Virus record (IMG/VR): IMGVR_UViG_3300009370_001221
Location: 1-64,000 of that record
Reading direction: 5' to 3' (one strand)
DNA: 64,000 nt
Shown: positions 17,324 to 46,405 of the stretch, piece after piece
Numbering within the stretch: position 1 is the stretch's first letter
Layout: every line of letters begins with the position of its first letter
Program-made: the position numbers and the translations under genes
The notes under the pieces: model-generated
What the model saw: only the letters and a program-made list of their open reading frames with translations
Database searches by the model: none
What the model was told of the DNA's origin: nothing

Positions 17324-17905
17324 TTGCTACCTAAATTGAATAACTTTTTCATTGACCCTGATATTTGCTTTGACGTGAGCAAATTACAGGATGCATTGCG
17401 CGAAGTTGATTCGCGAGTCGCAAGACAATCTCCTTTAGGCAAAAGAGACATCAATGCTATTTGTCTGACACAAATTCCCGGTGATCCAAACTCTATCACA
17501 GGTGGTAATGTAAGAGGATTATTTTGGACACGCCCAACAAGCAGTGGTGAAGAGGTCCAACGAGAAAATCCAATAGACGAATCCCAATATACTGAGTTTG
17601 TTAAACTATTTGAAGATACTTACTTCAAAGAAGTATACGATACACTTATTCCCAATTATAAATTAGGCAGAGTAAGATTGCTTTGGAAAATGCCACGCAC
17701 AACATTGAGTTGGCACAGGGATCCTGAACGCAGATTACACATACCTATCGTAACCAACCCAGGCGCACTAATGATTATTGATGATGAAGTAAAACATATG
17801 CCCGCAGATGGCAAAGTATGGATTACTGATAATACAAAATATCATAATGCGTTTAACGGAGGCGAGGAAGATCGCGTCCATTTAGTTGCTACAGTTATAG
17901 AATAA
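17324..17905 (+). CDS. Asp/Asn beta-hydroxylase-like oxygenase
   Basis: WHRD, RLHIPIVTN and HNAFNGGEEDRVHLV. Confidence 0.8.
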   Translation: MLPKLNNFFIDPDICFDVSKLQDALREVDSRVARQSPLGKRDINAICLTQIPGDPNSITGGNVRGLFWTRPTSSGEEVQRENPIDESQYTEFVKLFEDTYFKEVYDTLIPNYKLGRVRLLWKMPRTTLSWHRDPERRLHIPIVTNPGALMIIDDEVKHMPADGKVWITDNTKYHNAFNGGEEDRVHLVATVIE

Positions 17906-17936
17906 GGAAAGGCCCTAAACGGGCCCTTCCAAAAAA
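17906..17936. terminator. GC hairpin between the convergent oxygenase and tmRNA units
   Basis: GGAAAGGCCC-TAAAC-GGGCCCTTCC followed by A6. Confidence 0.55.
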
Positions 17937-18114
17937 GCAGATTGGGTAACAAGGTATGCTCTATACCCCGGAATACTGCCGTGATTAAGCGGCTAATGCG
18001 TATTCGTAATAATCGTCGTTTGCAATTATTTTAGTTTGCTGTTTTTTAACATGGAACTGCTCCCATGTGTCGTCCGTATATCGTCCTCACCCTGTCGAAG
18101 CCATGTCACCCCCG

Positions 18115-18258
18115 TCAAAAAAAGATTAAGTATACTATACCACCAATAATAATTATGTCGGCACAGATACTCCATGCGACATATATTTTAAACATATATT
18201 CTATAGCTTTCCTGAAAGGCCTTGGTAATGTTTTTATCTTGTTCCGGAGGAATCGCAT
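18115..18258 (-). CDS. 47-aa basic/transmembrane peptide inside the tmRNA intervening segment
   Basis: AGGAGG-8nt-ATG; MRFLRNKIKTLPRPFRKAIEYMFKIYVAWSICADIIIIGGIVYLIFF*; stop codon ends 1 nt before tmRNA G1. Confidence 0.65.
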   Translation of the reverse strand: MRFLRNKIKTLPRPFRKAIEYMFKIYVAWSICADIIIIGGIVYLIFF

Positions 18259-18292
18259 CGTCGCTTCCTCCTATCAATGTATTATAGTTCAT
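18188..18292 (-). CDS. Possible 34-aa ORF in the tmRNA intervening segment
   Basis: AAGGAGA RBS right after CCA; MNYNTLIGGSDDAIPPEQDKNITKAFQESYRIYV*; overlaps the 47-aa ORF out of frame. Confidence 0.35.
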   Translation of the reverse strand: MNYNTLIGGSDDAIPPEQDKNITKAFQESYRIYV

Positions 18293-18372
18293 TTTAATCT
18301 CCTTTTGGTGGAGGTGGTGGGGATCGAACCCACGTCCAGAATGCATATTGTCTACATCATACGACAATAAAG

Positions 18373-18546
18373 TTACTTACTTATTTTCTTTTCTTCATAT
18401 AAAACATGTTTGCGTACAACTGGGTCATACTTTTTTAATTTAAGTTTATTGCCACCCATCTTTCTTTTATTAACGGTTGTGGTATAATAATGCCCGGTAC
18501 CAGCAGTTGATACTAATTTAATAATTGTAATATTTTTACTTGCCAT
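18373..18546 (-). CDS. rpmG: 50S ribosomal protein bL33 (zinc-independent form)
   Basis: Hand translation: [57 protein letters not shown], with IKLVSxAGTGHxYTT and [10 protein letters not shown] signatures; TAATG overlap with the upstream gene; absent from ORF track (57 aa). Confidence 0.95.
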
Positions 18547-25758: not shown

Positions 25759-25845
25759 TGGCTCCGGGGGTTGGGATCGAACCAACATTGCCCATTGGGC
25801 ACCCTATAAACGGTAGGGCCTGTATACCTATTCCAGCACCCCGGA
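25759..25845 (-). tRNA. Atypical tRNA, anticodon GUU (Asn), long variable arm, encoded CCA
   Basis: TCCGGGG/CCCCGGA acceptor, G73, CCA; D arm CTG-GAATAGGTATA-CAG; anticodon arm CCCTA-CCGTTTA-TAGGG; variable arm TGCCC-AAT-GGGCA; T arm GTTGG-TTCGATC-CCAAC; 87 nt. Confidence 0.9.
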
Positions 25846-28709: not shown

Positions 28710-29060
28710 TTATCTACTACCACCTGAATATTTAGTTGCAAAGCCATGTTCTACAAGGTAATTATTAAGATTTACTTCTTCTATCATAATTTCACCTAGT
28801 AATCTACCAAACTTACCTTTCTTATCCAAGTATGTTTTAATAACAACATTAGATCCTACTGGGCACATTTCTTGCACTTTTGCTTTAGCGGCGAGTCCTT
28901 TTTCTTTTTCTACTAAATCGCGTGTTCTACTTTCAGGGGCGTTGATACCTAATAAGCGAACTCGTTGCTTTTTAAGTATAATACTAAATCCTAAGTCAAT
29001 ATCAACATCTATTGTGTCACCATCTACAACACGATCTATTGTTGCAGGATACTCATACAT
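28710..29060 (-). CDS. Thermonuclease (SNase) family nuclease
   Basis: RVVDGDTID, RVRLLGINAPE and GKFGRLLG. Confidence 0.9.
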   Translation of the reverse strand: MYEYPATIDRVVDGDTIDVDIDLGFSIILKKQRVRLLGINAPESRTRDLVEKEKGLAAKAKVQEMCPVGSNVVIKTYLDKKGKFGRLLGEIMIEEVNLNNYLVEHGFATKYSGGSR

Positions 29061-30856: not shown

Positions 30857-31147
30857 CTATTCTCCTATAATAACGTCTTCACTGCCCACAGCACGTGGAT
30901 GGCCACAAGTATCTTTATCAATTTTAGTTCGCAATGCTGGCTTTCCTTCAATAATAACTGACTTACATGTTGATACAGTTTTAGCACTACAATGAGGTGG
31001 GGATGGTAATGGACAAGGTGCATGAGGAGTGACATCCATTTGAGGTATGCCTGCTTTTCGTCCATTAATTAAGACAGATTCAGCACCGCCTTGAGCGATG
31101 CCGCCTGCTGAATTAGGGTCTTTGTCCCGCTGTGCTTTCCATGCCAT
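30857..31147 (-). CDS. PAAR-domain baseplate spike-tip protein
   Basis: SVLINGRKA, VTPHAPC..PPH, SVIIEGKPALR..DKDTCGH..GSEDVIIG. Confidence 0.88.
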   Translation of the reverse strand: MAWKAQRDKDPNSAGGIAQGGAESVLINGRKAGIPQMDVTPHAPCPLPSPPHCSAKTVSTCKSVIIEGKPALRTKIDKDTCGHPRAVGSEDVIIGE

Positions 31148-31159
31148 ACTACTATTTAT

Positions 31160-31456
31160 TTAACTTGGCATGGCAAGACCAGTAGTTCCTTGGATATACT
31201 GGTCAGACATTTCTTTTCTTGTTGGTGCAATTACTATACAATTATGTTTAGAAAGAGTTACAGTGGTATCCATTTCCATTGTTAACATAAATTGACTAAT
31301 ACCTACACCTTGCGGTCCTACTTGTAGAGACATTGGCTTGTCTACTGTAATATGAGTATCTGTTTCTTCTTCAAATCTAGCAACTAATTCTTCACCAGTT
31401 ACTAACTTAATTGATATTACATCACCTTTTTTATGATTGATTTCGATTAACATCCA
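31160..31456 (-). CDS. Sm-like-fold small phage protein
   Basis: ISIKLVTGEELVAR...QYIQGTTGL. Confidence 0.55.
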   Translation of the reverse strand, partial: WMLIEINHKKGDVISIKLVTGEELVARFEEETDTHITVDKPMSLQVGPQGVGISQFMLTMEMDTTVTLSKHNCIVIAPTRKEMSDQYIQGTTGLAMPS

Positions 31457-32051
31457 TACTTTCCTTAAAAATTCTAATAGCACTATAACATATTAATAGG
31501 CCTATACCACCACCAATTACGACATCTGGTATATTGCTCTGCGTTAGTCCTACTAATATACCAGCAATAATAATACCAACACTTGATATGGCATCATTTC
31601 TACAACAAATATATGCACTCTTTAAATTAATGTCTTTATTTTTATAATATAACAATAACATAGCAGATGCTATATTACCTATTAATACAAAAACTCCTAC
31701 TAAAGTAATAGGCGTAGCATTAGGCACATATCCTGTTATTACATTTTGAATAACATACCATAACGCTAATATACCAAAACTTAACATTATTATTGCTTTT
31801 AATAATGCGACTTTTGCTTTTACTATCAGACTAGAACTCATAACAAATATACTGCCTAATAGGATTAAAGCATCACCTATATTATGAGCACTATCACCAA
31901 GTAAACTAGCAGAATGGGATATTACACCAAAATATAACTCAACAACAAACATCAACGCATTAATTAAAAAACATATAATTAAAGCATTGCGTTCACATGC
32001 GCCACATTCTTCTAAATCATGACAGTCATCGTCTAAACATATTCGAAACAT
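31431..32051 (-). CDS. Cation diffusion facilitator (CDF) metal transporter
   Basis: SASLLGDSAHNIGDA and DINLKSAYICCRND; Cys/His-rich N-terminus. Confidence 0.88.
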   Translation of the reverse strand: MFRICLDDDCHDLEECGACERNALIICFLINALMFVVELYFGVISHSASLLGDSAHNIGDALILLGSIFVMSSSLIVKAKVALLKAIIMLSFGILALWYVIQNVITGYVPNATPITLVGVFVLIGNIASAMLLLYYKNKDINLKSAYICCRNDAISSVGIIIAGILVGLTQSNIPDVVIGGGIGLLICYSAIRIFKESMDVNRNQS

Positions 32052-32284: not shown

Positions 32285-32412
32285 ATTAAACCTTTCCAGT
32301 CTTTACTATGATCTACTTTGTGGCAATCACAGCCACAATCTTCACAGGTACAAATTCCTGTCTCATCGCATTTACAATCTGGATTAGTGCATCCACAATC
32401 CTTTTCTATCAT
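32281..32412 (-). CDS. 43-aa Cys-rich metallothionein-like protein
   Basis: Hand translation MIEKDCGCTNPDCKCDETGICTCEDCGCDCHKVDHSKDWKGLI*, 9 Cys in CxC motifs; ATGA overlaps with both nrdJ and glutaredoxin. Confidence 0.75.
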   Translation of the reverse strand: MIEKDCGCTNPDCKCDETGICTCEDCGCDCHKVDHSKDWKGLI

Positions 32413-34322
32413 ATTTCGCATCCTCCGGCTACACATGCTAATTCTTGACTGCTTGTAGTCATATCTTGTTGTTCATATTCGCTTAAAGTTTCCCAACTTA
32501 CATTTTTGGGCATACTTTGCATTGCTTGTTCATACTGTTCTTTAGTGCAATCTTGGTATGGTGCTTGCCGATACGTATGATCACTAAACGGTAAAAACGA
32601 TACACCAGACATTTGATCAAAGTGTTCATAAACCCACGCTCCGACCTCCAACCACTCGTGTTCTTTGACACTAATTGTTACTGAGGGTTTGTGTTCACAC
32701 CAATTATCTTGATAAATTTTCCATAATTCTAACTGTTCTATGGCTGTCATATCTTTTCTATAAACACCATATTGTGGCCCTTTCATTGGAAAGGAAAATA
32801 CTACAGTATGTTCTGGTTTTGTTACATCATCTTCTACAGGAAATCCTGCTTCTATCATCATTTTTGCTAATGGATCTTTTTTATCTGCTCTAACTGTTCG
32901 AATATAATATTGATTATGTCTTGCATGTATTCCACTTGCGCTATCTACTAATTGACTTACTGTACCTGATGGTTTTACACAAGTAATTGCAACAGATTGA
33001 TTAATACCAAGTCTCTTTGCCCAATCCTTATTAGTAGCAACAGCAACTTTTTTAAGTTCTGTGAGTAATTCCTCTAAACCTTTCTTTTTACCATTTGTTA
33101 ATGGATTATCCATAATACCTGTTAAAGAAACACCCAATAAACGCTCTTCATCACAATTCTGTAACCATCTCTTATTAAGATATCTAAAATTAGTAAGTGT
33201 TGATTGGAATGTGCCTAAAATAGTTGCATTAATAACTTTATCTTTTAATGTTTCAAAAGTATCGTTTGGACGAATTACTACTTCAGATAAATTACAAAAT
33301 TCTTCTGATCTTAAAATAATTTCACTGCAAGGGTTGGTGCCAAAATTATGATTTGGATCTCTACGTTCATTTTTGCCTGCTTGTTCTTTAGCGGCACGTC
33401 TGTTAAATATGCCACGCTCACCGGATTTGGACTCATAGAGAGATTTCCATTCTTCCATAAAAATACCAATATCAGGACGTTCAGTGTAACAAGCAGAATT
33501 ATTTGCTAATGCTCGTTGAGTTTGTGTTTCCCACCACTGTCCTGATTTTGCTAAACGCATTCTGTCGTCAGACAAATTTGACAAACTGATCAACGCAGAA
33601 CGCCTTACACCACCTACTACTACTATCTCCGCAATTTTACATGTAATATCATGACACTCTAAGGATGTTAGTCTACGTCCAGCGGCGCCTTTGAAAATAC
33701 CTACACAAAAATTAAATAAGTCTTCTAAAGGTTCTGGACCTGATGCTCTACCACCAAATGTTTTTAATGGAGAACCTGCGGCTCTAACTCGCGTCAAATC
33801 CCATACAGGAATTTGTCCGCCGTACAATAGATGAACTAATTCTTTGAGTGCTTTGGCCCAACCCAATTTAGAGTCACTTACTACAATAGTAGTTTCTGTT
33901 GGATAAAAATCATCAGCAACTCGGGGCATTTCATTAATCATTTGGCGTTCAACACTAAAGCCAACGCCCGTACCATTCATTAAGATATAAAGTATTTCGT
34001 CAAATGCACGTGGGTTATCAATTGCTACAAATGAACAATTATAACCCGCGACATTCTCGCGATGTAATGCCTCTCCAGCAGTCATAAGACAGCGCATAGA
34101 AGGCATTGTTTCTAAATTTAATACAGAATCTTGAAGTTTTTCTTTAAGATCTTTTGACAAATTATAACTACATGTCTCCTTTAAATGTTCTGCGAAGAAA
34201 GTAAAGTATCTGTCTACTGTTTCTTCCCATGTTTCTCGTCGATTGTCTTCATAACGGTAACGAGAGTATCTTGATAAATGAATGTATTGCTGGTATAGGG
34301 AGGGTAATTGATTATCTGCCAT
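32409..34322 (-). CDS. nrdJ: Class II (adenosylcobalamin-dependent) ribonucleotide reductase
   Basis: RETWEETVDRY, YNCSF, GGVRRSALISLS, TNPCSEI, CVKPSGTVS, C-terminal CVAGGC; no small subunit adjacent. Confidence 0.92.
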   Translation of the reverse strand: MADNQLPSLYQQYIHLSRYSRYRYEDNRRETWEETVDRYFTFFAEHLKETCSYNLSKDLKEKLQDSVLNLETMPSMRCLMTAGEALHRENVAGYNCSFVAIDNPRAFDEILYILMNGTGVGFSVERQMINEMPRVADDFYPTETTIVVSDSKLGWAKALKELVHLLYGGQIPVWDLTRVRAAGSPLKTFGGRASGPEPLEDLFNFCVGIFKGAAGRRLTSLECHDITCKIAEIVVVGGVRRSALISLSNLSDDRMRLAKSGQWWETQTQRALANNSACYTERPDIGIFMEEWKSLYESKSGERGIFNRRAAKEQAGKNERRDPNHNFGTNPCSEIILRSEEFCNLSEVVIRPNDTFETLKDKVINATILGTFQSTLTNFRYLNKRWLQNCDEERLLGVSLTGIMDNPLTNGKKKGLEELLTELKKVAVATNKDWAKRLGINQSVAITCVKPSGTVSQLVDSASGIHARHNQYYIRTVRADKKDPLAKMMIEAGFPVEDDVTKPEHTVVFSFPMKGPQYGVYRKDMTAIEQLELWKIYQDNWCEHKPSVTISVKEHEWLEVGAWVYEHFDQMSGVSFLPFSDHTYRQAPYQDCTKEQYEQAMQSMPKNVSWETLSEYEQQDMTTSSQELACVAGGCEI

Positions 34323-36326: not shown

Positions 36327-37607
36327 TTAACTGTAATTACAATTACTACAGGTTGAAGCACAAATATGTAAATTTCCATTTTTACTATTATATGGTGCAT
36401 TTACTGTTTGGAGAAATATATTTTCTGATGTATCTGGTTTCCAAGTTTGTTTGACAAGATTCATAAATCCACTATCAAATACTGCTTTAATACTTCCATG
36501 CTTTAATGCATCATTTACATCTTGTTGTAAGCCTGCGTATTTTAAAAGTTCTCGAGTATCATATGTATATTCATTTGCTATTCTTGTATGGTTCAATCCC
36601 ATCATGCAACATGGATATACATAACCATCTGCTGTAATAAAAATTCGTTGTAAATCAACTGCCATACAATCTATTTTACGATTCTCAATAAAACGAGCTT
36701 CTCCTCCACCACGTAAAATATTATTAATATCTACATTATCAAAATTATTAGTAATATTGGCATATCCACCTAAATAACCTTCAAGCCAAGATTTCTCTGT
36801 AATATCTTTCTCCCAAGACTTTTCTTGATTTAAATATTTTTTACTGACAATTTTACCAAATTCTATTGTTTGTTTCATATCAACAGTATGCCCATCAAGT
36901 GCATCTACATTAGTATTTTCTTTTAAATTTGTTGTAGCATTCATATAACCATATTCATCTATAGTTGAGTCTTCCAATTGTCCAACATATACTCCTTTGT
37001 TATCCATAACAGGAGTACCATTAGGACGATCTGATTTAATAACATCAATATTATTAAAATTATATGCTTTAGCTAATCTTTTTACTTCTTCTAATTGATG
37101 TTGATTATGCTTAAACAATATAAATTGCCAACATGCATTTCCTCCAGCATCAATAAATGCTGTTGCATTACTTAATACTTTAAGATAACTTGTATTACGC
37201 CTATAAAACGAATGCACTTCTTCTGTAGTGCCATCAATTGCCCATATTATTTTCATCCCTTTACCATACTTTGCAAACTCTGCCCAATAATGTTGCTCAT
37301 ACATTGAACCATTAGTATTGAGGGTTGCCCAAATCTCTGGATTAACACTAAACAAATATTCTACCATATCGTGCAAATAAGGATTCATTTGGGCATCACC
37401 CAGATTACCACAAAAACTTATATCGTTTAATTGTTGCAAAAATTCTTCGGGCAATAGTATTTTAAACTGCTCAAGTGTCATATTGCCTTTATATATACCG
37501 GGTTTTGCCCCATAACCAAAATAATTTCGCGGACAGGCAGGACAAGCGGCATTGCACCGCTCTGTTATTTCTATTTGAACACTTTTAATATCGTTGAGAT
37601 TATACAT
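36327..37607 (-). CDS. Radical SAM/SPASM-domain protein
   Basis: CNAACPAC, FCGNLGD, NTNGS, IDG and GYVYPCC; start reassigned to MYNL. Confidence 0.88.
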   Translation of the reverse strand: MYNLNDIKSVQIEITERCNAACPACPRNYFGYGAKPGIYKGNMTLEQFKILLPEEFLQQLNDISFCGNLGDAQMNPYLHDMVEYLFSVNPEIWATLNTNGSMYEQHYWAEFAKYGKGMKIIWAIDGTTEEVHSFYRRNTSYLKVLSNATAFIDAGGNACWQFILFKHNQHQLEEVKRLAKAYNFNNIDVIKSDRPNGTPVMDNKGVYVGQLEDSTIDEYGYMNATTNLKENTNVDALDGHTVDMKQTIEFGKIVSKKYLNQEKSWEKDITEKSWLEGYLGGYANITNNFDNVDINNILRGGGEARFIENRKIDCMAVDLQRIFITADGYVYPCCMMGLNHTRIANEYTYDTRELLKYAGLQQDVNDALKHGSIKAVFDSGFMNLVKQTWKPDTSENIFLQTVNAPYNSKNGNLHICASTCSNCNYS

Positions 37608-38280
37608 TATAATACTGGGCGACTTTATCATTCCAACCTTCAGCCACGGTGTCAAACTCCTCACCTTCAATAACAAATTCTTGATATGTTAAATCACGAC
37701 TGCACATTAGTATAACTCCAGTATTTATTTCTGTATCAAACATCTCATTATGAGCCTGAGCATAAGCAGTAAGTTGGCAAAAGTAATCATCAACCCATTC
37801 TCTTTTCTTTGGTTTATTTGTTTGCTTAAAATCTAAAATTGCTAACTTACCATTCCATAAACCAACACAATCTGTTGTGCCGGCATATAAACCACTGGCA
37901 TACAACGAAACTTCTGTGCCATATATCTCTGCTACTTGCCTAAAACCTTCCGCTATAATAACATTAGACATACTATATGCTTGCTGATGTATTTGATTAC
38001 TGCCTACTTTTCTCTTTTCACTGTTAATGTATAATTCTAAATTTTTATGCATTAACGTGCCAACATTAGCAGCTTCTGTAGTAATTTGCTGTGCTTGCTC
38101 TGTGCCAACACGCTTTCTCCAATTTGCTAATGCTTCTCTTTTTTCTTTTGATTTTGTTGCATCTAGTATAGTTGTAACACTAGGAACACTTGAGCCATCA
38201 GGTAACTTATAATGGCGTTTTCTGTCTATTGTTGTTACTCTGTCAATAGGAGAGTATTCGTATTTCTCTAATAATAGCAT
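37600..38280 (-). CDS. PD-(D/E)XK exonuclease (phage Cas4-like family)
   Basis: PSVTTIL, GTLMH, YAGTTDC, ILDFKQ and QLTAYA. Confidence 0.88.
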   Translation of the reverse strand: MLLLEKYEYSPIDRVTTIDRKRHYKLPDGSSVPSVTTILDATKSKEKREALANWRKRVGTEQAQQITTEAANVGTLMHKNLELYINSEKRKVGSNQIHQQAYSMSNVIIAEGFRQVAEIYGTEVSLYASGLYAGTTDCVGLWNGKLAILDFKQTNKPKKREWVDDYFCQLTAYAQAHNEMFDTEINTGVILMCSRDLTYQEFVIEGEEFDTVAEGWNDKVAQYYNV

Positions 38281-43699: not shown

Positions 43700-44536
43700 T
43701 TAAGCATCAAAGGCTGGATTTGGATCGGTACCGTATTTTTTATACCACTCTACTGTGCCATATTTAGGTTTAGATACTTGTGCCACTGGCTCATCTCGCC
43801 GAGGTTCAGGTGCGTCTACACCTTGTGTTTTTTGTTTTGGTATTGGTGTAGCATAGTCTTGTTTTTGTTTGTATAACTCCATTTTATCAATGATATCTTG
43901 TTGATATTGTAATCCAGCATCTCCTTTAGGAGTTGGACCAGCATTATACATTCGTGATGCTTGATCATCTGTTTTTGCACCATATTTTTCTTTTTGTAAT
44001 TTCCAATATACTCCAGCAACTCTTATATTATCTTCAGGATCATGTAAATCTACTTTTCGACCAAGATACTTTTCTACATCTTTTCTTGCTAATTCTCTAA
44101 TTTGTCCTATACCAATTGCAGTACCTTTATCACCTGTAAGTGTTTTTCCAGTTTTATCATCTGTATGATTAAAACTTGATTCTTGATGTAAATGAGCAGC
44201 TAATCTCGCATATGGAATACCAAGTTCTTTTGCAATTTTAGCAATGCGTTCTTTATATATTTTATATGACCTAGGAATTTCTGAAGATTCAGTTAAAGGC
44301 ATTCTAACTTTTATATTAGATTCATTTATTTGGGTATTACGAACAAAAGCAATTTCACCTTCTCTTTTAACACGCTTAAATACAGACTTATTAACCAACC
44401 CATTAGCAGTATGAACTTCTCGTTCTGTTAAATCTTTTTTGTATATCGGCTCATTGGAATAAGAAAGTAAAAACTCACTTTCCACAAGACTAATATAAAC
44501 TAATGCTGTTAAACCTGCTACTTGTGCAAATCTCAT
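43700..44536 (-). CDS. Lytic transglycosylase (SLT) domain protein
   Basis: HQESSF, AIGIGQI, DPEDNIRVAGVY and YNAGP. Confidence 0.85.
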   Translation of the reverse strand: MRFAQVAGLTALVYISLVESEFLLSYSNEPIYKKDLTEREVHTANGLVNKSVFKRVKREGEIAFVRNTQINESNIKVRMPLTESSEIPRSYKIYKERIAKIAKELGIPYARLAAHLHQESSFNHTDDKTGKTLTGDKGTAIGIGQIRELARKDVEKYLGRKVDLHDPEDNIRVAGVYWKLQKEKYGAKTDDQASRMYNAGPTPKGDAGLQYQQDIIDKMELYKQKQDYATPIPKQKTQGVDAPEPRRDEPVAQVSKPKYGTVEWYKKYGTDPNPAFDA

Positions 44537-45051
44537 CGTATGTCCAGTGGAATCCCTTGCCGTTTCATTTTTCTTACAAGTTGTGCCTGCTCTGCTGGAC
44601 TACGCTCTATTTCAAGTGCAATGCCATTAGGACTCATAGTCACAAAATAATCTTTCCAACTTATTATTTTAGGACGTTTTGCTATATTATTTGGATCTGA
44701 AACATATAACCGGCCACTTCTTATTAAATTAGCTTGCGATTGTGCTATCCCTAATTGTAATAATTGTTCATCAGGTGTTATAATATATATTGTAGGATTT
44801 GCAGGCCATGGTTGCTCACGTATAGATATAGGATTACCAATTTGTCCTATTAAACCTAATGCTAATTTTGCTTCATCTGCTTCGGAAGGTTCAGTTGTCA
44901 TTTCACCAGTATCTGGATCAATACGCATATCACGCCCAGTACTATCTAAATCAACAGAAGTATCAACACCAGGTTGACCATGCAATTCAATATCATGTCC
45001 TGATACGCCTTTAATACTTAATGGTGCTTCAAATAATTCTGCTAATTTCAT
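44533..45051 (-). CDS. Hypothetical protein
   Basis: MKLAELFEA N-terminus. Confidence 0.6.
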   Translation of the reverse strand: MKLAELFEAPLSIKGVSGHDIELHGQPGVDTSVDLDSTGRDMRIDPDTGEMTTEPSEADEAKLALGLIGQIGNPISIREQPWPANPTIYIITPDEQLLQLGIAQSQANLIRSGRLYVSDPNNIAKRPKIISWKDYFVTMSPNGIALEIERSPAEQAQLVRKMKRQGIPLDIR

Positions 45052-45323
45052 CGTTTGCCAGCCTTATTTAATTTTTGTTTCATTATACTTGCTGGATTAG
45101 TTCTTTTTGTTCTCTTTGATTTTCGAGCAATTTTTGCACCAATCTTTGCTTTAAGCATTTTTAATTTAAAACGCTTTTTAATATCTGGTGCCGCAAAACA
45201 CTGTGCTGGCTTCGCAACAATCCTTCCTTTACGTCGGCCAGAAGTACACCGGTACTTACGAACGAGTTTTTTACCCGCCCTATGCCAAGCCATTTTTACT
45301 TCAAAGAGTTCTTCCAAATACAT
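45048..45323 (-). CDS. Basic protein, possible DNA-binding head protein
   Basis: MYLEELFE then K/R-rich; YRCTSGRRKGRIV..PAQC. Confidence 0.6.
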   Translation of the reverse strand: MYLEELFEVKMAWHRAGKKLVRKYRCTSGRRKGRIVAKPAQCFAAPDIKKRFKLKMLKAKIGAKIARKSKRTKRTNPASIMKQKLNKAGKR

Positions 45324-45342: not shown

Positions 45343-45591
45343 TTATGCTATAGTTAATAGATAGATGACTGCTGAAAATAGAGCAGTAATGATGGAACCA
45401 CTTAAAATGTACATAGATTTATACTTATTTTTTTCGTTGACTAGTAGATTATGTCTAATTTCATCGAGTTGCTGTTCAATGACCGTTAAACGACTTTCAA
45501 TTCGTTCCATATTCTCCTCCAAGTAACCGTAGCGTTCACTGCAGATTTCTACGTGTGCCTCGAGGCTCTGTTTTTCAATCTCTGATGGCAT
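45343..45591 (-). CDS. Coiled-coil protein with C-terminal TM helix (XhlA/holin-like topology)
   Basis: LEAHVEICSERY coiled coil followed by a hydrophobic tail. Confidence 0.55.
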   Translation of the reverse strand: MPSEIEKQSLEAHVEICSERYGYLEENMERIESRLTVIEQQLDEIRHNLLVNEKNKYKSMYILSGSIITALFSAVIYLLTIA

Positions 45592-45619
45592 AATAATCCT
45601 TTAATGTCATACAAAAAAT

Positions 45620-45695
45620 GCCTACCGCCCGCCCTTTAATTTGTGCCTTTACAAATGCCTATCATTTCGCCTAAAATGAGCCTAAGTCTCTGCCT
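45620..45695 (-). repeat. Periodic AGGC motif array in the leader of 45343..45591
   Basis: GCCT (plus strand) at 45620, 45645, 45657, 45669, 45680 and 45692, plus GCCC at 45631. Confidence 0.7.
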
Positions 45696-45720
45696 AGTAC
45701 GAGTATTTATGAAGGGTGGG

Positions 45721-46278
45721 TTATAGATTAAAAGGTATTTTTTCGTTTAAAACAAAATATATATTTTTATTACGAGGATTACTAGCATCCCAAATGGGGG
45801 TTTTTAGTTTAATTGATTCTGTTAAATTAGCAATTACAGGAACATTAGTGAAATCATTTATCAGGCCTGATAATAGTTGATCTTCTTGTCCACGCTCGGT
45901 ATAAAGTCCAACTTGCTCTACACTAAAAGAAGTAGACCAAAATATATGTTTTCCTTTATATGAGGAACCAAAATTTAATTGCTTAATATCATCTACTGTA
46001 TATTTCCGTGGAAGTTCAATATACATAGGGTTTCCACGTAAACTAATAGTTTGTATAAATGTTTCACAATTGCTTTGTTGGTTTCTACTTTTATTCCAAG
46101 ACTGTTCATTATTGACTACTTGTTTTGCATCATCAATAAATGCAGAAATGTCTGCTCTGTAAGGTGACACCACGCCTGTTTGTGTAATATCTACTAGGGT
46201 ATATACAGTAATAAACTCACCAACGCCACTTCCAAACTTGCCTTCGCCAGCAATACCATGTGCTCTTTCTTTTGCCAT
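45721..46278 (-). CDS. Hypothetical virion protein
   Basis: YTLVDITQTG...RNQQSN...ISLRGNP...NIYF. Confidence 0.6.
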   Translation of the reverse strand: MAKERAHGIAGEGKFGSGVGEFITVYTLVDITQTGVVSPYRADISAFIDDAKQVVNNEQSWNKSRNQQSNCETFIQTISLRGNPMYIELPRKYTVDDIKQLNFGSSYKGKHIFWSTSFSVEQVGLYTERGQEDQLLSGLINDFTNVPVIANLTESIKLKTPIWDASNPRNKNIYFVLNEKIPFNL

Positions 46279-46318
46279 AACTTACCTATAATATGCTATT
46301 ATAATATTTAGTGTAGGC

Positions 46319-46347
46319 AAAAAAAAGCGGAGCATTTATGCTCCGCT
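46319..46347 (-). terminator. Rho-independent terminator
   Basis: AGCGGAGCAT-TT-ATGCTCCGCT preceded by an A run (U tract on the minus strand). Confidence 0.85.
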
Positions 46348-46405
46348 CTTTAAATCTACTAGTCTTTAGAAATTTCTAAAAACTGGGTGATTTTACGCTA
46401 GTATC

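What the first reader, a model, noticed from the sequence alone, without database searches (positions are those of the whole stretch)
45592..45710. Leader RNA with periodic AGGC motifs, some in hairpin loops
Seen: on the minus strand, after a TAAATA, AGGC recurs six times (plus one AGGG) at 11-14 nt intervals. Two copies sit in clean hairpins (TCATTT-TAGGCG-AAATGA and ATTTGT-AAAGGC-ACAAAT). Established: CsrB/RsmZ RNAs display repeated GGA loops, and TRAP binds periodic triplets. Inference: a multivalent protein-binding RNA or phased DNA site controlling a holin-like gene, or a small-RNA sponge with a different specificity.
Basis: partly seen in the sequence, partly recalled or inferred. Interest (0 to 1): 0.6.

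Follow-up and report, generated by a model that had tools for sequence, protein, structure and literature searches.

The report
Repeated AGGC operator before phage lysis gene
The periodic AGGC array is a real, strongly conserved leader element in front of a small holin-like gene of an uncultured marine jumbo phage. The same motif sits on the ribosome-binding site of the phage's single-strand-DNA-binding protein gene, so it is probably a shared translational operator that could link lysis to DNA replication.

Summary
On the minus strand, 6 AGGC plus 1 AGGG recur every 11-13 nt at 45620-45695, between a late-promoter-like CATAAATA and an 82-aa XhlA/holin-like gene. It is the densest AGGC cluster in the 235-kb phage genome, and 0 of 200 simulated genomes reach it.

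The 80-nt core is 87-100% identical in relatives, and 87-91% between lineages whose neighbouring third codon positions are only 58-72% identical. Most distant homologues of the gene (33-44% identity) also carry a 60-150-nt leader with typically 3-8 copies of A-GGC-A/U at 10-13 nt spacing, with unrelated spacers. This holds for 143 of 157 unique leaders. A few lineages have a 5-40-nt leader with almost no GGC.

The same motif, 2-5 copies with the last usually inside the Shine-Dalgarno sequence, marks the leader of the gp32-like SSB gene in 74 of 74 unique leaders of this phage group. These are the only two leaders in this genome with paired motifs.

Best reading: a single-stranded RNA translational operator. 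Its binder is a sequence-specific phage factor, most plausibly the gp32-like SSB by analogy with T4 gene 32 autoregulation. The binder is inferred, not shown.

It is not a CsrB/RsmZ sponge, not a TRAP site and not an Rfam family, and the "Sm-like" ORF has no support.

The parts
45703..45710 (-). Late-promoter-like CATAAATA (T4-type TATAAATA class)
   Evidence: ATAAATA occurs 50 times in the genome. 39 of these lie within 150 nt upstream of an ORF in sense, mostly 0-30 nt away. TAAATA is kept at this position in all relatives.
45592..45702 (-). 5' leader of about 105-110 nt of the 82-aa gene's late mRNA
   Evidence: It is the longest leader (112 nt) that paired with an ATAAATA site in this genome; the rest lie mostly 0-30 nt from their ORF. 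RNA-library contigs from three studies cover 45417-45858. The fold z-score is -0.54.
45620..45695 (-). Array of 6 AGGC plus 1 AGGG with an 11-13 nt period. Copies lie at 45695-45692, 45683-45680, 45672-45669, 45660-45657, 45648-45645, 45635-45632 (AGGG) and 45623-45620.
   Evidence: The GGC core is invariant in the 9 distinct relatives' leaders aligned. The core is 87-100% identical where third codon positions are 58-72% identical.
45682..45697 (-). 5'-proximal hairpin CTAGG/CTTAG with loop CAGAGA, which buries copies 1 and 2 in the stem
   Evidence: RNAalifold consensus. There is one U-A to U-G change and no compensatory change.
45662..45679 (-). Hairpin 1, TCATTT-TAGGCG-AAATGA, with copy 3 in the loop
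   Evidence: Invariant in all relatives, so covariation says nothing for or against it.
45639..45656 (-). Hairpin 2, ATTTGT-AAAGGC-ACAAAT, with copy 5 in the loop; not conserved as a hairpin
   Evidence: The 3' arm changes to ACAATT or ACATAA in L003 and L004 without compensation.
45619..45635 (-). G-rich block AGGGCGGGCGGTAGGCA holding three closely packed GGC copies; contains an ops-like GGCGGTAG
   Evidence: Invariant except for the T, which is A or C in relatives. In IMG/VR the pattern hits only this clade plus unrelated high-GC coding DNA.
45589..45602 (-). Shine-Dalgarno AAAGGA (45602-45597) and start codon ATG (45591-45589). AUGCC can pair with the GGCAU of array copies.
   Evidence: five invariant pairs between GGCAU and AUGCC; not general in other lineages.
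45343..45591 (-). 82-aa protein (p82): N-terminal coiled coil plus C-terminal TM helix, XhlA/holin-like
   Evidence: Weak phrog_1193 'hemolysin' (XhlA) hit, E = 0.0012. ESM-Atlas features are close to XhlA and DUF2951 clusters. In several lineages an SLT transglycosylase gene follows directly.
45721..46278 (-). 185-aa protein of unknown function; conserved upstream neighbour whose stop abuts the promoter
   Evidence: The order p185, TAAATA, p82 is kept in nearly all loci. No Pfam, PHROG or Atlas lead.
45048..45323 (-). 91-aa very basic protein (p91) with an N-terminus (M-x-L-x-E-L-F-E) like a T4 capsid-targeting sequence; probable internal head protein. Tested and weakened as the binder.
43700..44536 (-). 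278-aa SLT-domain lytic transglycosylase with a hydrophobic N-terminus (endolysin or internal-virion type)
   Evidence: Pfam SLT E = 1.8e-6. PHROG endolysin and internal-virion-protein hits.

Best explanation
The array is the core of a conserved 5'-leader RNA operator on the late mRNA of a small XhlA/holin-like membrane protein (p82). It consists of 3-8 single-stranded A-GGC-A/U sites spaced 10-13 nt apart, separated by G-poor A/C/U-rich spacers that keep the sites unpaired.

The same site, in 2-5 copies with the last one usually inside the Shine-Dalgarno sequence (AGGAGGC-A/U), forms the leader of the phage's gp32-like SSB gene. I therefore read both leaders as targets of one sequence-specific trans-acting RNA binder. 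By analogy with T4 gene 32, that binder controls translation initiation. The most plausible binder is the gp32-like SSB itself. If so, translation of the lysis-associated protein would follow the pool of SSB that is not engaged on single-stranded DNA.

In some lineages the array is closed by a helix, GAUGCU/AGCAUC. The 3' arm of this helix overlaps an anti-SD mimic (UCACC) that sequesters the SD (GGUGA). Occupancy of the array could therefore switch SD accessibility.

Shown: the motif, its period, purifying selection, linkage to two genes, sense orientation, and coverage by RNA-library contigs. Inferred: RNA-level action, the identity of the binder, and the sign of regulation.
For: (1) The cluster is non-random: it is unique in the genome and was reached by 0 of 200 simulated genomes.

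(2) Purifying selection: the leader core is 87-100% identical over all pairs, and 87-91% between the divergent lineages. In those lineages the adjacent gene's third codon positions are 58-72% identical and the core-to-ATG spacer 57-72%.

(3) Deep conservation of the motif but not the sequence. Of 157 unique leaders of the p82 family, 143 are 60-150 nt long with mostly 3-8 GGC. In the 48 leaders measured, the consensus is A at -1 (87%), A or T at +3 (73% and 19%) and never G at -2. Spacing peaks at 12 nt, and density is 4.0 per 100 nt against 0.71 expected.

(4) In the loci held, such arrays lie at this position; the few other matches to the pattern are coding or chance.

(5) The same motif in the same context occurs in all 74 unique gene-32 leaders, 53 of them with exactly 3 copies and the last usually in the SD. 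This includes phages that lack the p82 array (G001 and G002).

(6) In this genome, non-coding AGGCW pairs upstream of genes occur only at gene 32 and p82.

(7) The two leaders follow different promoter classes: a perfect TTGACA-17-TATAAT for gene 32 and TAAATA for p82. The motif is always in the sense strand of the transcribed region. Arm changes in the closing helix are U-A to U-G, which is tolerated only in RNA.

(8) The leader is no more structured than shuffles, and G is depleted outside GGC (13%).

(9) Contigs from RNA libraries of three studies cover the leader and the 5' part of p82, with patchy coverage elsewhere.

(10) Precedent: T4 gp32 represses its own translation through a 5' structure followed by unstructured UUAA(A) repeats that overlap the RBS, and operator specificity diverges between T4 and RB69 (PMC3014915, PMC535899).
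Against: - No binding data exist and the binder is inferred from analogy only.
- T4 gp32 binds RNA without a strong sequence motif and occupies about 7 nt per monomer (textbook figure, not checked here). Neither a strict AGGCW core nor a 12-nt period follows from that.
- At p82 the array ends 20-50 nt before the SD, so direct occlusion needs spreading or a structural switch.
- No compensatory base-pair changes support any helix.
- The RNA evidence comes from assembled contigs. They cannot show transcript ends or strand, and could include DNA carry-over.
- Phages G001 and G002 keep the gene-32 motif but have no p82 array, so the coupling is dispensable.
- The cultured relatives PA5oct-like and RaK2 lack the motif at gene 32.
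Confidence: 0.5

Rival explanations
1. It is an RNA operator as above, but the binder is a different sequence-specific RNA-binding protein. This could be an unknown phage-encoded translational regulator (RegA-like in role) or a conserved host factor that regulates both gene 32 and p82.
For: A strict 5-nt core with a 12-nt period fits a dedicated oligomeric RNA-binding protein better than a non-specific SSB. The genome record is only 67% complete and most ORFs are unannotated.
Against: No CsrA, Hfq, RegA or RegB model matches in the genome. The nearby basic protein p91 is absent from a complete array-bearing genome (G013) and looks like an internal head protein. A host factor would have to be conserved across marine and freshwater hosts.
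Confidence: 0.25
2. The AGGCW sites are cleavage sites of a sequence-specific endoribonuclease. This would resemble T4 RegB, which cuts GGAG in Shine-Dalgarno sequences. The nuclease would inactivate or mature the two mRNAs.
For: At gene 32 the last copy lies inside the SD, as RegB targets do (PMC3014915). Multiple accessible single-stranded copies would suit a nuclease.
Against: There is no RegB homologue. A regular 10-13 nt period and 3-8 copies are not needed for cleavage. RNA-library contigs span the whole array uncut (records 13 and 14).
Confidence: 0.08
3. The array acts on DNA, as phased sites for a DNA-binding protein downstream of the promoter. Candidates are a roadblock or repressor, a clamp-loading or nicking site for late transcription, or an origin- or centromere-like iteron set.
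For: Direct repeats at roughly one helical turn are typical of iterons.
Against: Spacing varies from 9 to 15 nt with a mode of 12, not 10.5. The same motif follows two unrelated promoter types and overlaps an SD. It is always in the sense strand. The G-depleted spacers and the G-U-tolerant closing helix make sense only for RNA.
Confidence: 0.07
4. It is a protein-independent cis element. It could be an unstructured ribosome standby or enhancer platform made of SD-like AGG or UAAGG tracts. Alternatively it could be a self-contained switch in which GGCAU copies pair with the AUGCC start region.
For: UAAGG is complementary to the 3' end of 16S rRNA (general knowledge). RNAalifold pairs GGCAU with AUGCC in the window clade. 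SD-sequestering hairpins lie beside the array in other lineages.
Against: The conserved part is GGC plus A/U, not the SD-like AGG. ATGCC starts occur in only 13 of 157 leaders. GCC(U) is not enriched in the coding starts of array-bearing genes.
Confidence: 0.08
5. It is a CsrB/RsmZ-like sponge or a CsrA-regulated leader.
For: There are multiple purine-rich sites, some in hexaloops, and the true SD is AAGGA.
Against: The core is GGC, with C invariant by definition and A/U only after it. The loops are not conserved. No CsrA gene was found, there is no own terminator, and no Rfam family matches.
Confidence: 0.02

Closest known systems
Translational operator of bacteriophage T4/RB69 gene 32 (gp32 autogenous repression)
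   Same: Both are 5'-UTR elements made of a 5' structure followed by an unstructured stretch of short repeats that reaches the ribosome-binding site (PMC3014915). In this phage group the gp32-family SSB gene itself carries the AGGCW version. Operator sequences are known to diverge between phages (PMC535899).
   Different: The repeats have a strict GGC core instead of UUAA(A), and a 10-13 nt period. No pseudoknot is shown. A second, unrelated late gene (holin-like p82) carries a larger copy of the operator. Binding by the SSB is untested.
CsrA/RsmA targets and CsrB/RsmZ sponge RNAs
   Same: Both have multiple short purine-rich sites in a leader or RNA, with multivalent binding and translational control at or near the SD.
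   Different: The core is GGC, not GGA. The sites are not held in conserved hairpin loops. It is not a free sRNA, no CsrA gene was detected, and there is no Rfam match.
TRAP and HutP binding arrays (Bacillus trp and hut leaders)
   Same: Both are periodic short motifs in a single-stranded leader that wrap an oligomeric protein.
   Different: TRAP and HutP use GAG/UAG triplets with 2-4 nt spacers (general knowledge). Here a 5-nt motif recurs every 12 nt with 3-8 copies.
T4 RegB-cleaved or RegA-repressed ribosome-binding sites
   Same: Both are phage post-transcriptional control through a short motif at or near SD sequences of several genes (PMC3014915).
   Different: No RegA or RegB homologue was found. 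The motif differs, and the sites form arrays rather than single sites.
RfaH ops element (GGCGGTAG)
   Same: The window contains an exact GGCGGTAG inside the G-rich block at 45619-45635.
   Different: The T, which general knowledge says is essential for ops, is A or C in close relatives. The block is absent from all distant arrays.

Membership tests
T4-type gene 32 translational operator | Lies in the 5' UTR of the gp32-family SSB gene and overlaps its ribosome-binding site | tested here: met
   This is met for the sister element. All 74 unique gene-32 leaders carry 2-5 AGGCW copies, the last usually within AGGAGGC. In this genome it lies at 69994-70027. It is not met for the window's own element, which precedes a different gene and ends about 20 nt before the SD.
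T4-type gene 32 translational operator | Unstructured region of short repeats downstream of a 5' nucleating structure (a pseudoknot in T4) | tested here: inconclusive
   Repeats are present, fold z = -0.54 and G is depleted. 5' hairpins or closing helices exist, but no pseudoknot or covariation was shown.
T4-type gene 32 translational operator | Bound by the SSB when it exceeds available ssDNA, repressing translation | not testable with these tools
   This needs binding and translation assays.
CsrA-binding leader or CsrB/RsmZ sponge | GGA core, typically in hairpin loops | tested here: not met
   The core is GGC followed by A/U. Hairpin 2 is not conserved and most arrays are unpaired.
CsrA-binding leader or CsrB/RsmZ sponge | Independent sRNA with its own terminator, or an Rfam CsrB/RsmZ match | tested here: not met
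   There are no Rfam hits. The T-run after the last copy is not conserved.
TRAP-binding attenuator | 9-11 (G/U)AG triplets separated by 2-3 nt | tested here: not met
   The period is 10-13 nt with 3-8 copies and a GGC core.
RfaH ops / JUMPStart | Conserved GGCGGTAG with an invariant T | tested here: not met
   T varies to A or C in relatives. The block is absent in distant arrays.
ANTAR dual-hexaloop target | Two conserved tandem hairpins with hexaloops (A at 1, G at 4) | tested here: not met
   The second hairpin is broken without compensation in L003 and L004.
XhlA / holin-like lysis protein (for the downstream gene) | Small protein with an N-terminal coiled coil and a C-terminal TM helix, sequence match to XhlA, and an adjacent endolysin | tested here: inconclusive
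   phrog_1193 E = 0.0012. There is no Pfam XhlA hit. Atlas features score 0.93 to XhlA clusters. An SLT gene is adjacent in some lineages.

The most novel reading that the evidence does not exclude
A gp32-family SSB in a very large, uncultured clade of marine and freshwater jumbo phages has evolved sequence-specific recognition of AGGC(A/U) RNA sites. It uses them to autoregulate, and also to gate translation of a holin-like lysis protein. The pool of SSB not bound to single-stranded DNA would then act as a molecular timer that couples the end of replication and packaging to host lysis.
Probability: 0.3. Interest if true: 0.8.

Novelty: new variant of a known kind. Interest (0 to 1): 0.62.

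Why it matters
Lysis timing sets phage burst size, and in abundant marine phages it sets carbon release, yet its control outside model phages is almost unknown. This is a simple cis element that is easy to recognise. It is conserved across hundreds of uncultured jumbo-phage contigs and links exactly two genes: the replication SSB and a holin-like protein.

If one factor reads both leaders, this would be a second natural target for gene-32-type autogenous control. It would also be a directly testable link between DNA metabolism and lysis. The motif also gives an annotation handle for two leaders in metagenomic phage contigs, and a compact multivalent RNA tag whose binder can be sought by pull-down.

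Tried and rejected
- **Rfam.** The window at gathering threshold gave only a tmRNA. Twenty related loci at E <= 1 gave nothing on the leaders.
- **Covariation.** RNAalifold on 9 variants found 0 compensatory pairs, and hairpin 2 is not conserved.
- **G-rich block elsewhere.** The pattern AGGGCGGGCGGNAGGCA in IMG/VR hits only this clade plus unrelated high-GC coding DNA.
- **ops/RfaH.** Rejected because the T varies.
- **uORF in the leader.** ATGATAGGC... (9 codons) is frameshifted in L007 and L009 (reading).
- **G-quadruplex.** Many arrays have only 3 GG runs.
- **Cis-antisense pairing with the coding start.** GCC(U) is not enriched there.
- **Start-codon pairing (GGCAU:AUGCC).** Present in only 13 of 157 leaders.
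- **p91 as the binder.** It is adjacent in many lineages. All 59 p91 loci where a p82 start could be placed have long GGC-bearing leaders. It is absent from the array-less G001 and G002. However, it is also absent from the complete array-bearing genome G013, and it has a T4-like capsid-targeting N-terminus. Weakened.
- **'Sm-like' ORF at 31160-31483.** No Pfam hit.
- **CsrA, Hfq, RegA and RegB models.** None matches in the genome.
- **Isolates.** No cultured phage in the collection has p82.
- **Genome-wide pattern scan in larger relatives.** Swamped by coding GGC repeats, but it led to the gene 32 leader.
- **Unpaired-probability analysis.** Uninformative, because GGC are the only strong pairers.
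- **Literature search.** Nothing found for the motif.

Full report
**1. What the window is**

The window is the first 64 kb of a single 235,363-bp viral record with GC 0.36, about 67% complete by CheckV. Most genes run on the minus strand.
- Its gp32-like SSB is 44-58% identical to those of PA5oct-like, RaK2, 121Q and Atu_ph07 jumbo phages and just reaches the Pfam gp32 threshold.
- A DUF6267 protein matches cyanophage, Melnitz and HTVC008M proteins.
- DNA runs that hold the stretch are marine or seawater metagenomes.
- ATAAATA behaves as a promoter word. Of 50 copies in the genome, 39 lie within 150 nt upstream of an ORF in sense, mostly 0-30 nt away. This matches the T4-type late promoter class TATAAATA, a comparison from general knowledge.

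**2. The observation**

- CATAAATA lies at 45710-45703.
- AGGC lies at 45695, 45683, 45672, 45660, 45648 and 45623 (position of the A), and AGGG at 45635. The intervals are 11-13 nt.
- Both hairpins are present.
- It is the only site in the whole genome with 6 AGGC in a 110-nt scan window; the six copies span 76 nt.
- None of 200 first-order Markov simulated genomes reached 6 in 80 nt.
- TAGGC is not over-represented in the window overall, so the signal is the clustering.
- The leader folds no better than shuffled sequence, z = -0.54.

**3. Conservation in close relatives**

IMG/VR and JGI contigs give 9 distinct versions of the leader. In these relatives the upstream protein is 63-100% identical.
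- Every GGC core is invariant.
- The first 38 nt (ACTAGGCA...GAAATGA) are almost invariant.
- The G-rich block varies only at one base.
- Pairwise, the 80-82-nt core is 87-100% identical. It stays at 87-91% between lineages whose p82 third codon positions are 58-72% identical and whose core-to-ATG spacer is 57-72% identical. That is purifying selection on non-coding sequence.
- No helix shows compensatory change. Hairpin 2 is broken in L003 and L004.

**4. Conservation in distant relatives**

An alignment-based scan of metagenome contigs with the p82 family returned 80 loci (more than 500 candidates exist), most of them 33-44% identical to p82. The gene order p185, TAAATA, p82 is kept.
- Over all loci collected, the 157 unique leaders are bimodal. 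143 are 60-150 nt long and carry mostly 3-8 GGC. 14 are 5-40 nt long, and 12 of those carry none.
- In the 48 long leaders of the metagenome set, GGC occurs at 4.0 per 100 nt against 0.71 expected from composition.
- The context is A at -1 (87%), A or T at +3 (73% and 19%) and never G at -2.
- Spacing peaks sharply at 10-13 nt with a mode of 12. Gaps of 22-24 nt hold degenerate copies such as AGACA.
- G outside GGC is only 13%.
- Spacer sequences are unrelated between lineages, so it is the motif and its period that are conserved.
- On a p82 tree the short-leader state needs 4 changes, at least 2 of them forced by supported branches. The array has therefore been lost or gained repeatedly. My first impression that it was a clade-specific insertion was wrong.
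- Within the loci held, such arrays lie at this position; the few other pattern matches are coding or chance.

**5. Extra structure in some lineages**

In many lineages the transcript would begin with GAUGCU, which pairs with AGCAUC after the array.
- The only arm changes seen are U-A to U-G (AGCGUC, GGCAUC) or added flanking pairs. This is compatible with an RNA helix but is not proof.
- The 3' arm overlaps by two bases an anti-SD mimic (UCACC) that pairs with the SD (GGUGA) 6 nt before the AUG. There are again wobble-type changes (UCGCC) and extensions (UCACCU/AGGUGA).
- The closing helix and the SD sequestor are therefore mutually exclusive. This suggests, but does not show, a switch driven by occupancy of the array.
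- In the window's own clade, GGCAU of the array can pair with the invariant AUGCC of the start. This is not general, since ATGCC starts occur in only 13 of 157 leaders.

**6. The second target**

A pattern scan of larger relatives turned up a similar array in front of a gp32-like SSB gene.
- In this genome the SSB gene lies at 69033-69986 (minus strand, outside the window).
- It follows a perfect TTGACA-17-TATAAT promoter.
- Its leader reads ...AGGCAcattttAGGCAaataacAGACAagAGGCAtattatt-ATG.
- The SSB leaders of G003, G013, G001 and G002 also carry AGGCA copies. G001 and G002 are the phages with a short, array-less p82 leader.
- A scan of IMG/VR gave 74 unique gene-32 leaders. All have 2-5 GGC in the last 110 nt, and 53 have exactly 3.
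- The flanks match those of the p82 array: A at -1 in 92%, A at +3 in 76% and T in 21%.
- The last copy usually lies inside the SD as AGGAGGC-A/U.
- In this genome the only non-coding AGGCW pairs upstream of genes are at gene 32 and p82.
- Among cultured relatives, PA5oct-like and RaK2 lack the motif at gene 32. Atu_ph07 has AATTTAGCACA repeats and a vibriophage has GGTACA twice. Repeat operators of differing sequence may therefore be a general feature of this SSB family.

**7. Interpretation**

Several facts favour action on RNA over action on DNA:
- the two leaders lie behind different promoter classes;
- the motif is always in the sense strand of the transcribed region;
- at gene 32 it overlaps the SD;
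- it sits in G-depleted, unstructured sequence;
- one helix tolerates G-U pairs.

The established precedent is T4 gene 32. There gp32 in excess over ssDNA binds a 5' pseudoknot and spreads over unstructured UUAA(A) repeats that overlap the RBS (PMC3014915). Operators diverge between T4 and RB69 (PMC535899).

I therefore propose that AGGCW arrays are translational operators of one trans factor, most plausibly the gp32-like SSB. I further propose that the p82 leader places a lysis-associated protein under the same control.

p82 is XhlA/holin-like by architecture and by weak profile and language-model similarity. In several lineages an SLT transglycosylase gene follows it directly; in the window the SLT gene is two genes downstream.

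The identity of the binder, the sign of regulation and the structural switch are all inferences.

**8. Transcription**

Logan contigs of RNA libraries from three studies cover 45417-45858, which spans the 5' part of p82, the whole leader and the 3' end of p185. Other parts of the 2.5-kb stretch are uncovered. One contig ends 11 nt beyond the array, at a variant TAAATA. Contigs cannot give strand or transcript ends, and DNA carry-over is possible. This is supportive evidence only.

**9. Alternatives and dead ends**

These are listed under rival explanations and under tried and rejected. The main ones are:
- another RNA-binding protein, with no CsrA, Hfq, RegA or RegB found;
- p91, weakened;
- RegB-like cleavage sites;
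- DNA iterons;
- a protein-independent element.

**10. Verdict**

The element is real and under selection. It defines a widespread, previously unannotated leader family tied to two genes. Mechanistically it is closest to the gene 32 translational operator, but it differs in having a strict sequence core, a 12-nt period and a second target. I file it as a new variant of a known kind.

Noticed in passing
window 17903-18417 (-); tRNA-Asn at 25759-25845 (-): A permuted, beta-proteobacterial-type tmRNA (Rfam RF04321 at 119.7 bits, RF01850 at 99.6 bits) and a tRNA-Asn are encoded inside this viral record. This may hint at a betaproteobacterial host such as marine Methylophilales, or at phage-borne trans-translation.
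   Followed up: no
genome 69987-70095 (-), outside the window: The gp32-like SSB gene has a perfect sigma-70 consensus promoter (TTGACA-17-TATAAT). Its leader carries three AGGCA copies plus one AGACA. Its start context (AUUAUUAUG-G-CAUCA) is nearly identical to that of p82 (AUUAUUAUG-C-CAUCA).
   Followed up: partly
window 45048-45323 (-) and 44533-45051 (-): Two adjacent proteins begin with M-x-L-x-E-L-F-E, like the T4 capsid-targeting sequence of internal head proteins. The 91-aa one is extremely basic, is 50-67% conserved across lineages where p82 is about 35-40% conserved, and has more than 400 relatives in IMG/VR.
   Followed up: partly
window 46279-46405 (intergenic between the 97-aa ORF and p185); L086 382-479; L133 108-212: Weak sub-threshold matches to the Rfam L20_leader model (28-30 bits against a gathering score of 58.7) fall in the same intergenic spacer of two distant relatives. 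This may be a conserved structure or terminator after the 97-aa gene.
   Followed up: no
L352 (Atu_ph07, about 60 nt upstream of its SSB gene); L353 (Vibrio phage 2.275.O): Cultured relatives have different short repeats in the SSB leader: AATTTAGCACA two or three times, and GGTACA twice. Lineage-specific repeat operators may be a general feature of this SSB family.
   Followed up: no
window 43700-44536 (-): The SLT-domain transglycosylase has a hydrophobic N-terminus (MRFAQVAGLTALVYISLV), resembling a signal-anchor-release endolysin. In some relatives it directly follows p82, as in a holin-endolysin pair.
   Followed up: no
window 30857-31147 (-), 31431-32051 (-), 28710-29060 (-), 36327-37676 (-): There are unusual cargo genes for a phage: a PAAR-like protein, a cation-efflux family protein, a staphylococcal-nuclease homologue and a radical-SAM protein. 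A class I-like ribonucleotide reductase lies nearby at 32409-34322.
   Followed up: no
window 45713-45719 (-) versus 45628-45634 (-): CCCACCC, just upstream of the promoter, can pair with GGGCGGG of the G-rich block. That pairing would enclose the promoter and array in read-through transcripts. It is absent in L009, L034 and L040, so it is probably incidental.
   Followed up: partly
G013:C1:30186-31419 and 294007-298081: A complete 322-kb relative carries long coding arrays of GGC-AGY-nnn-GGC-TAY repeats (collagen-like Gly-X-Y). These swamp any genome-wide search for the motif.
   Followed up: no
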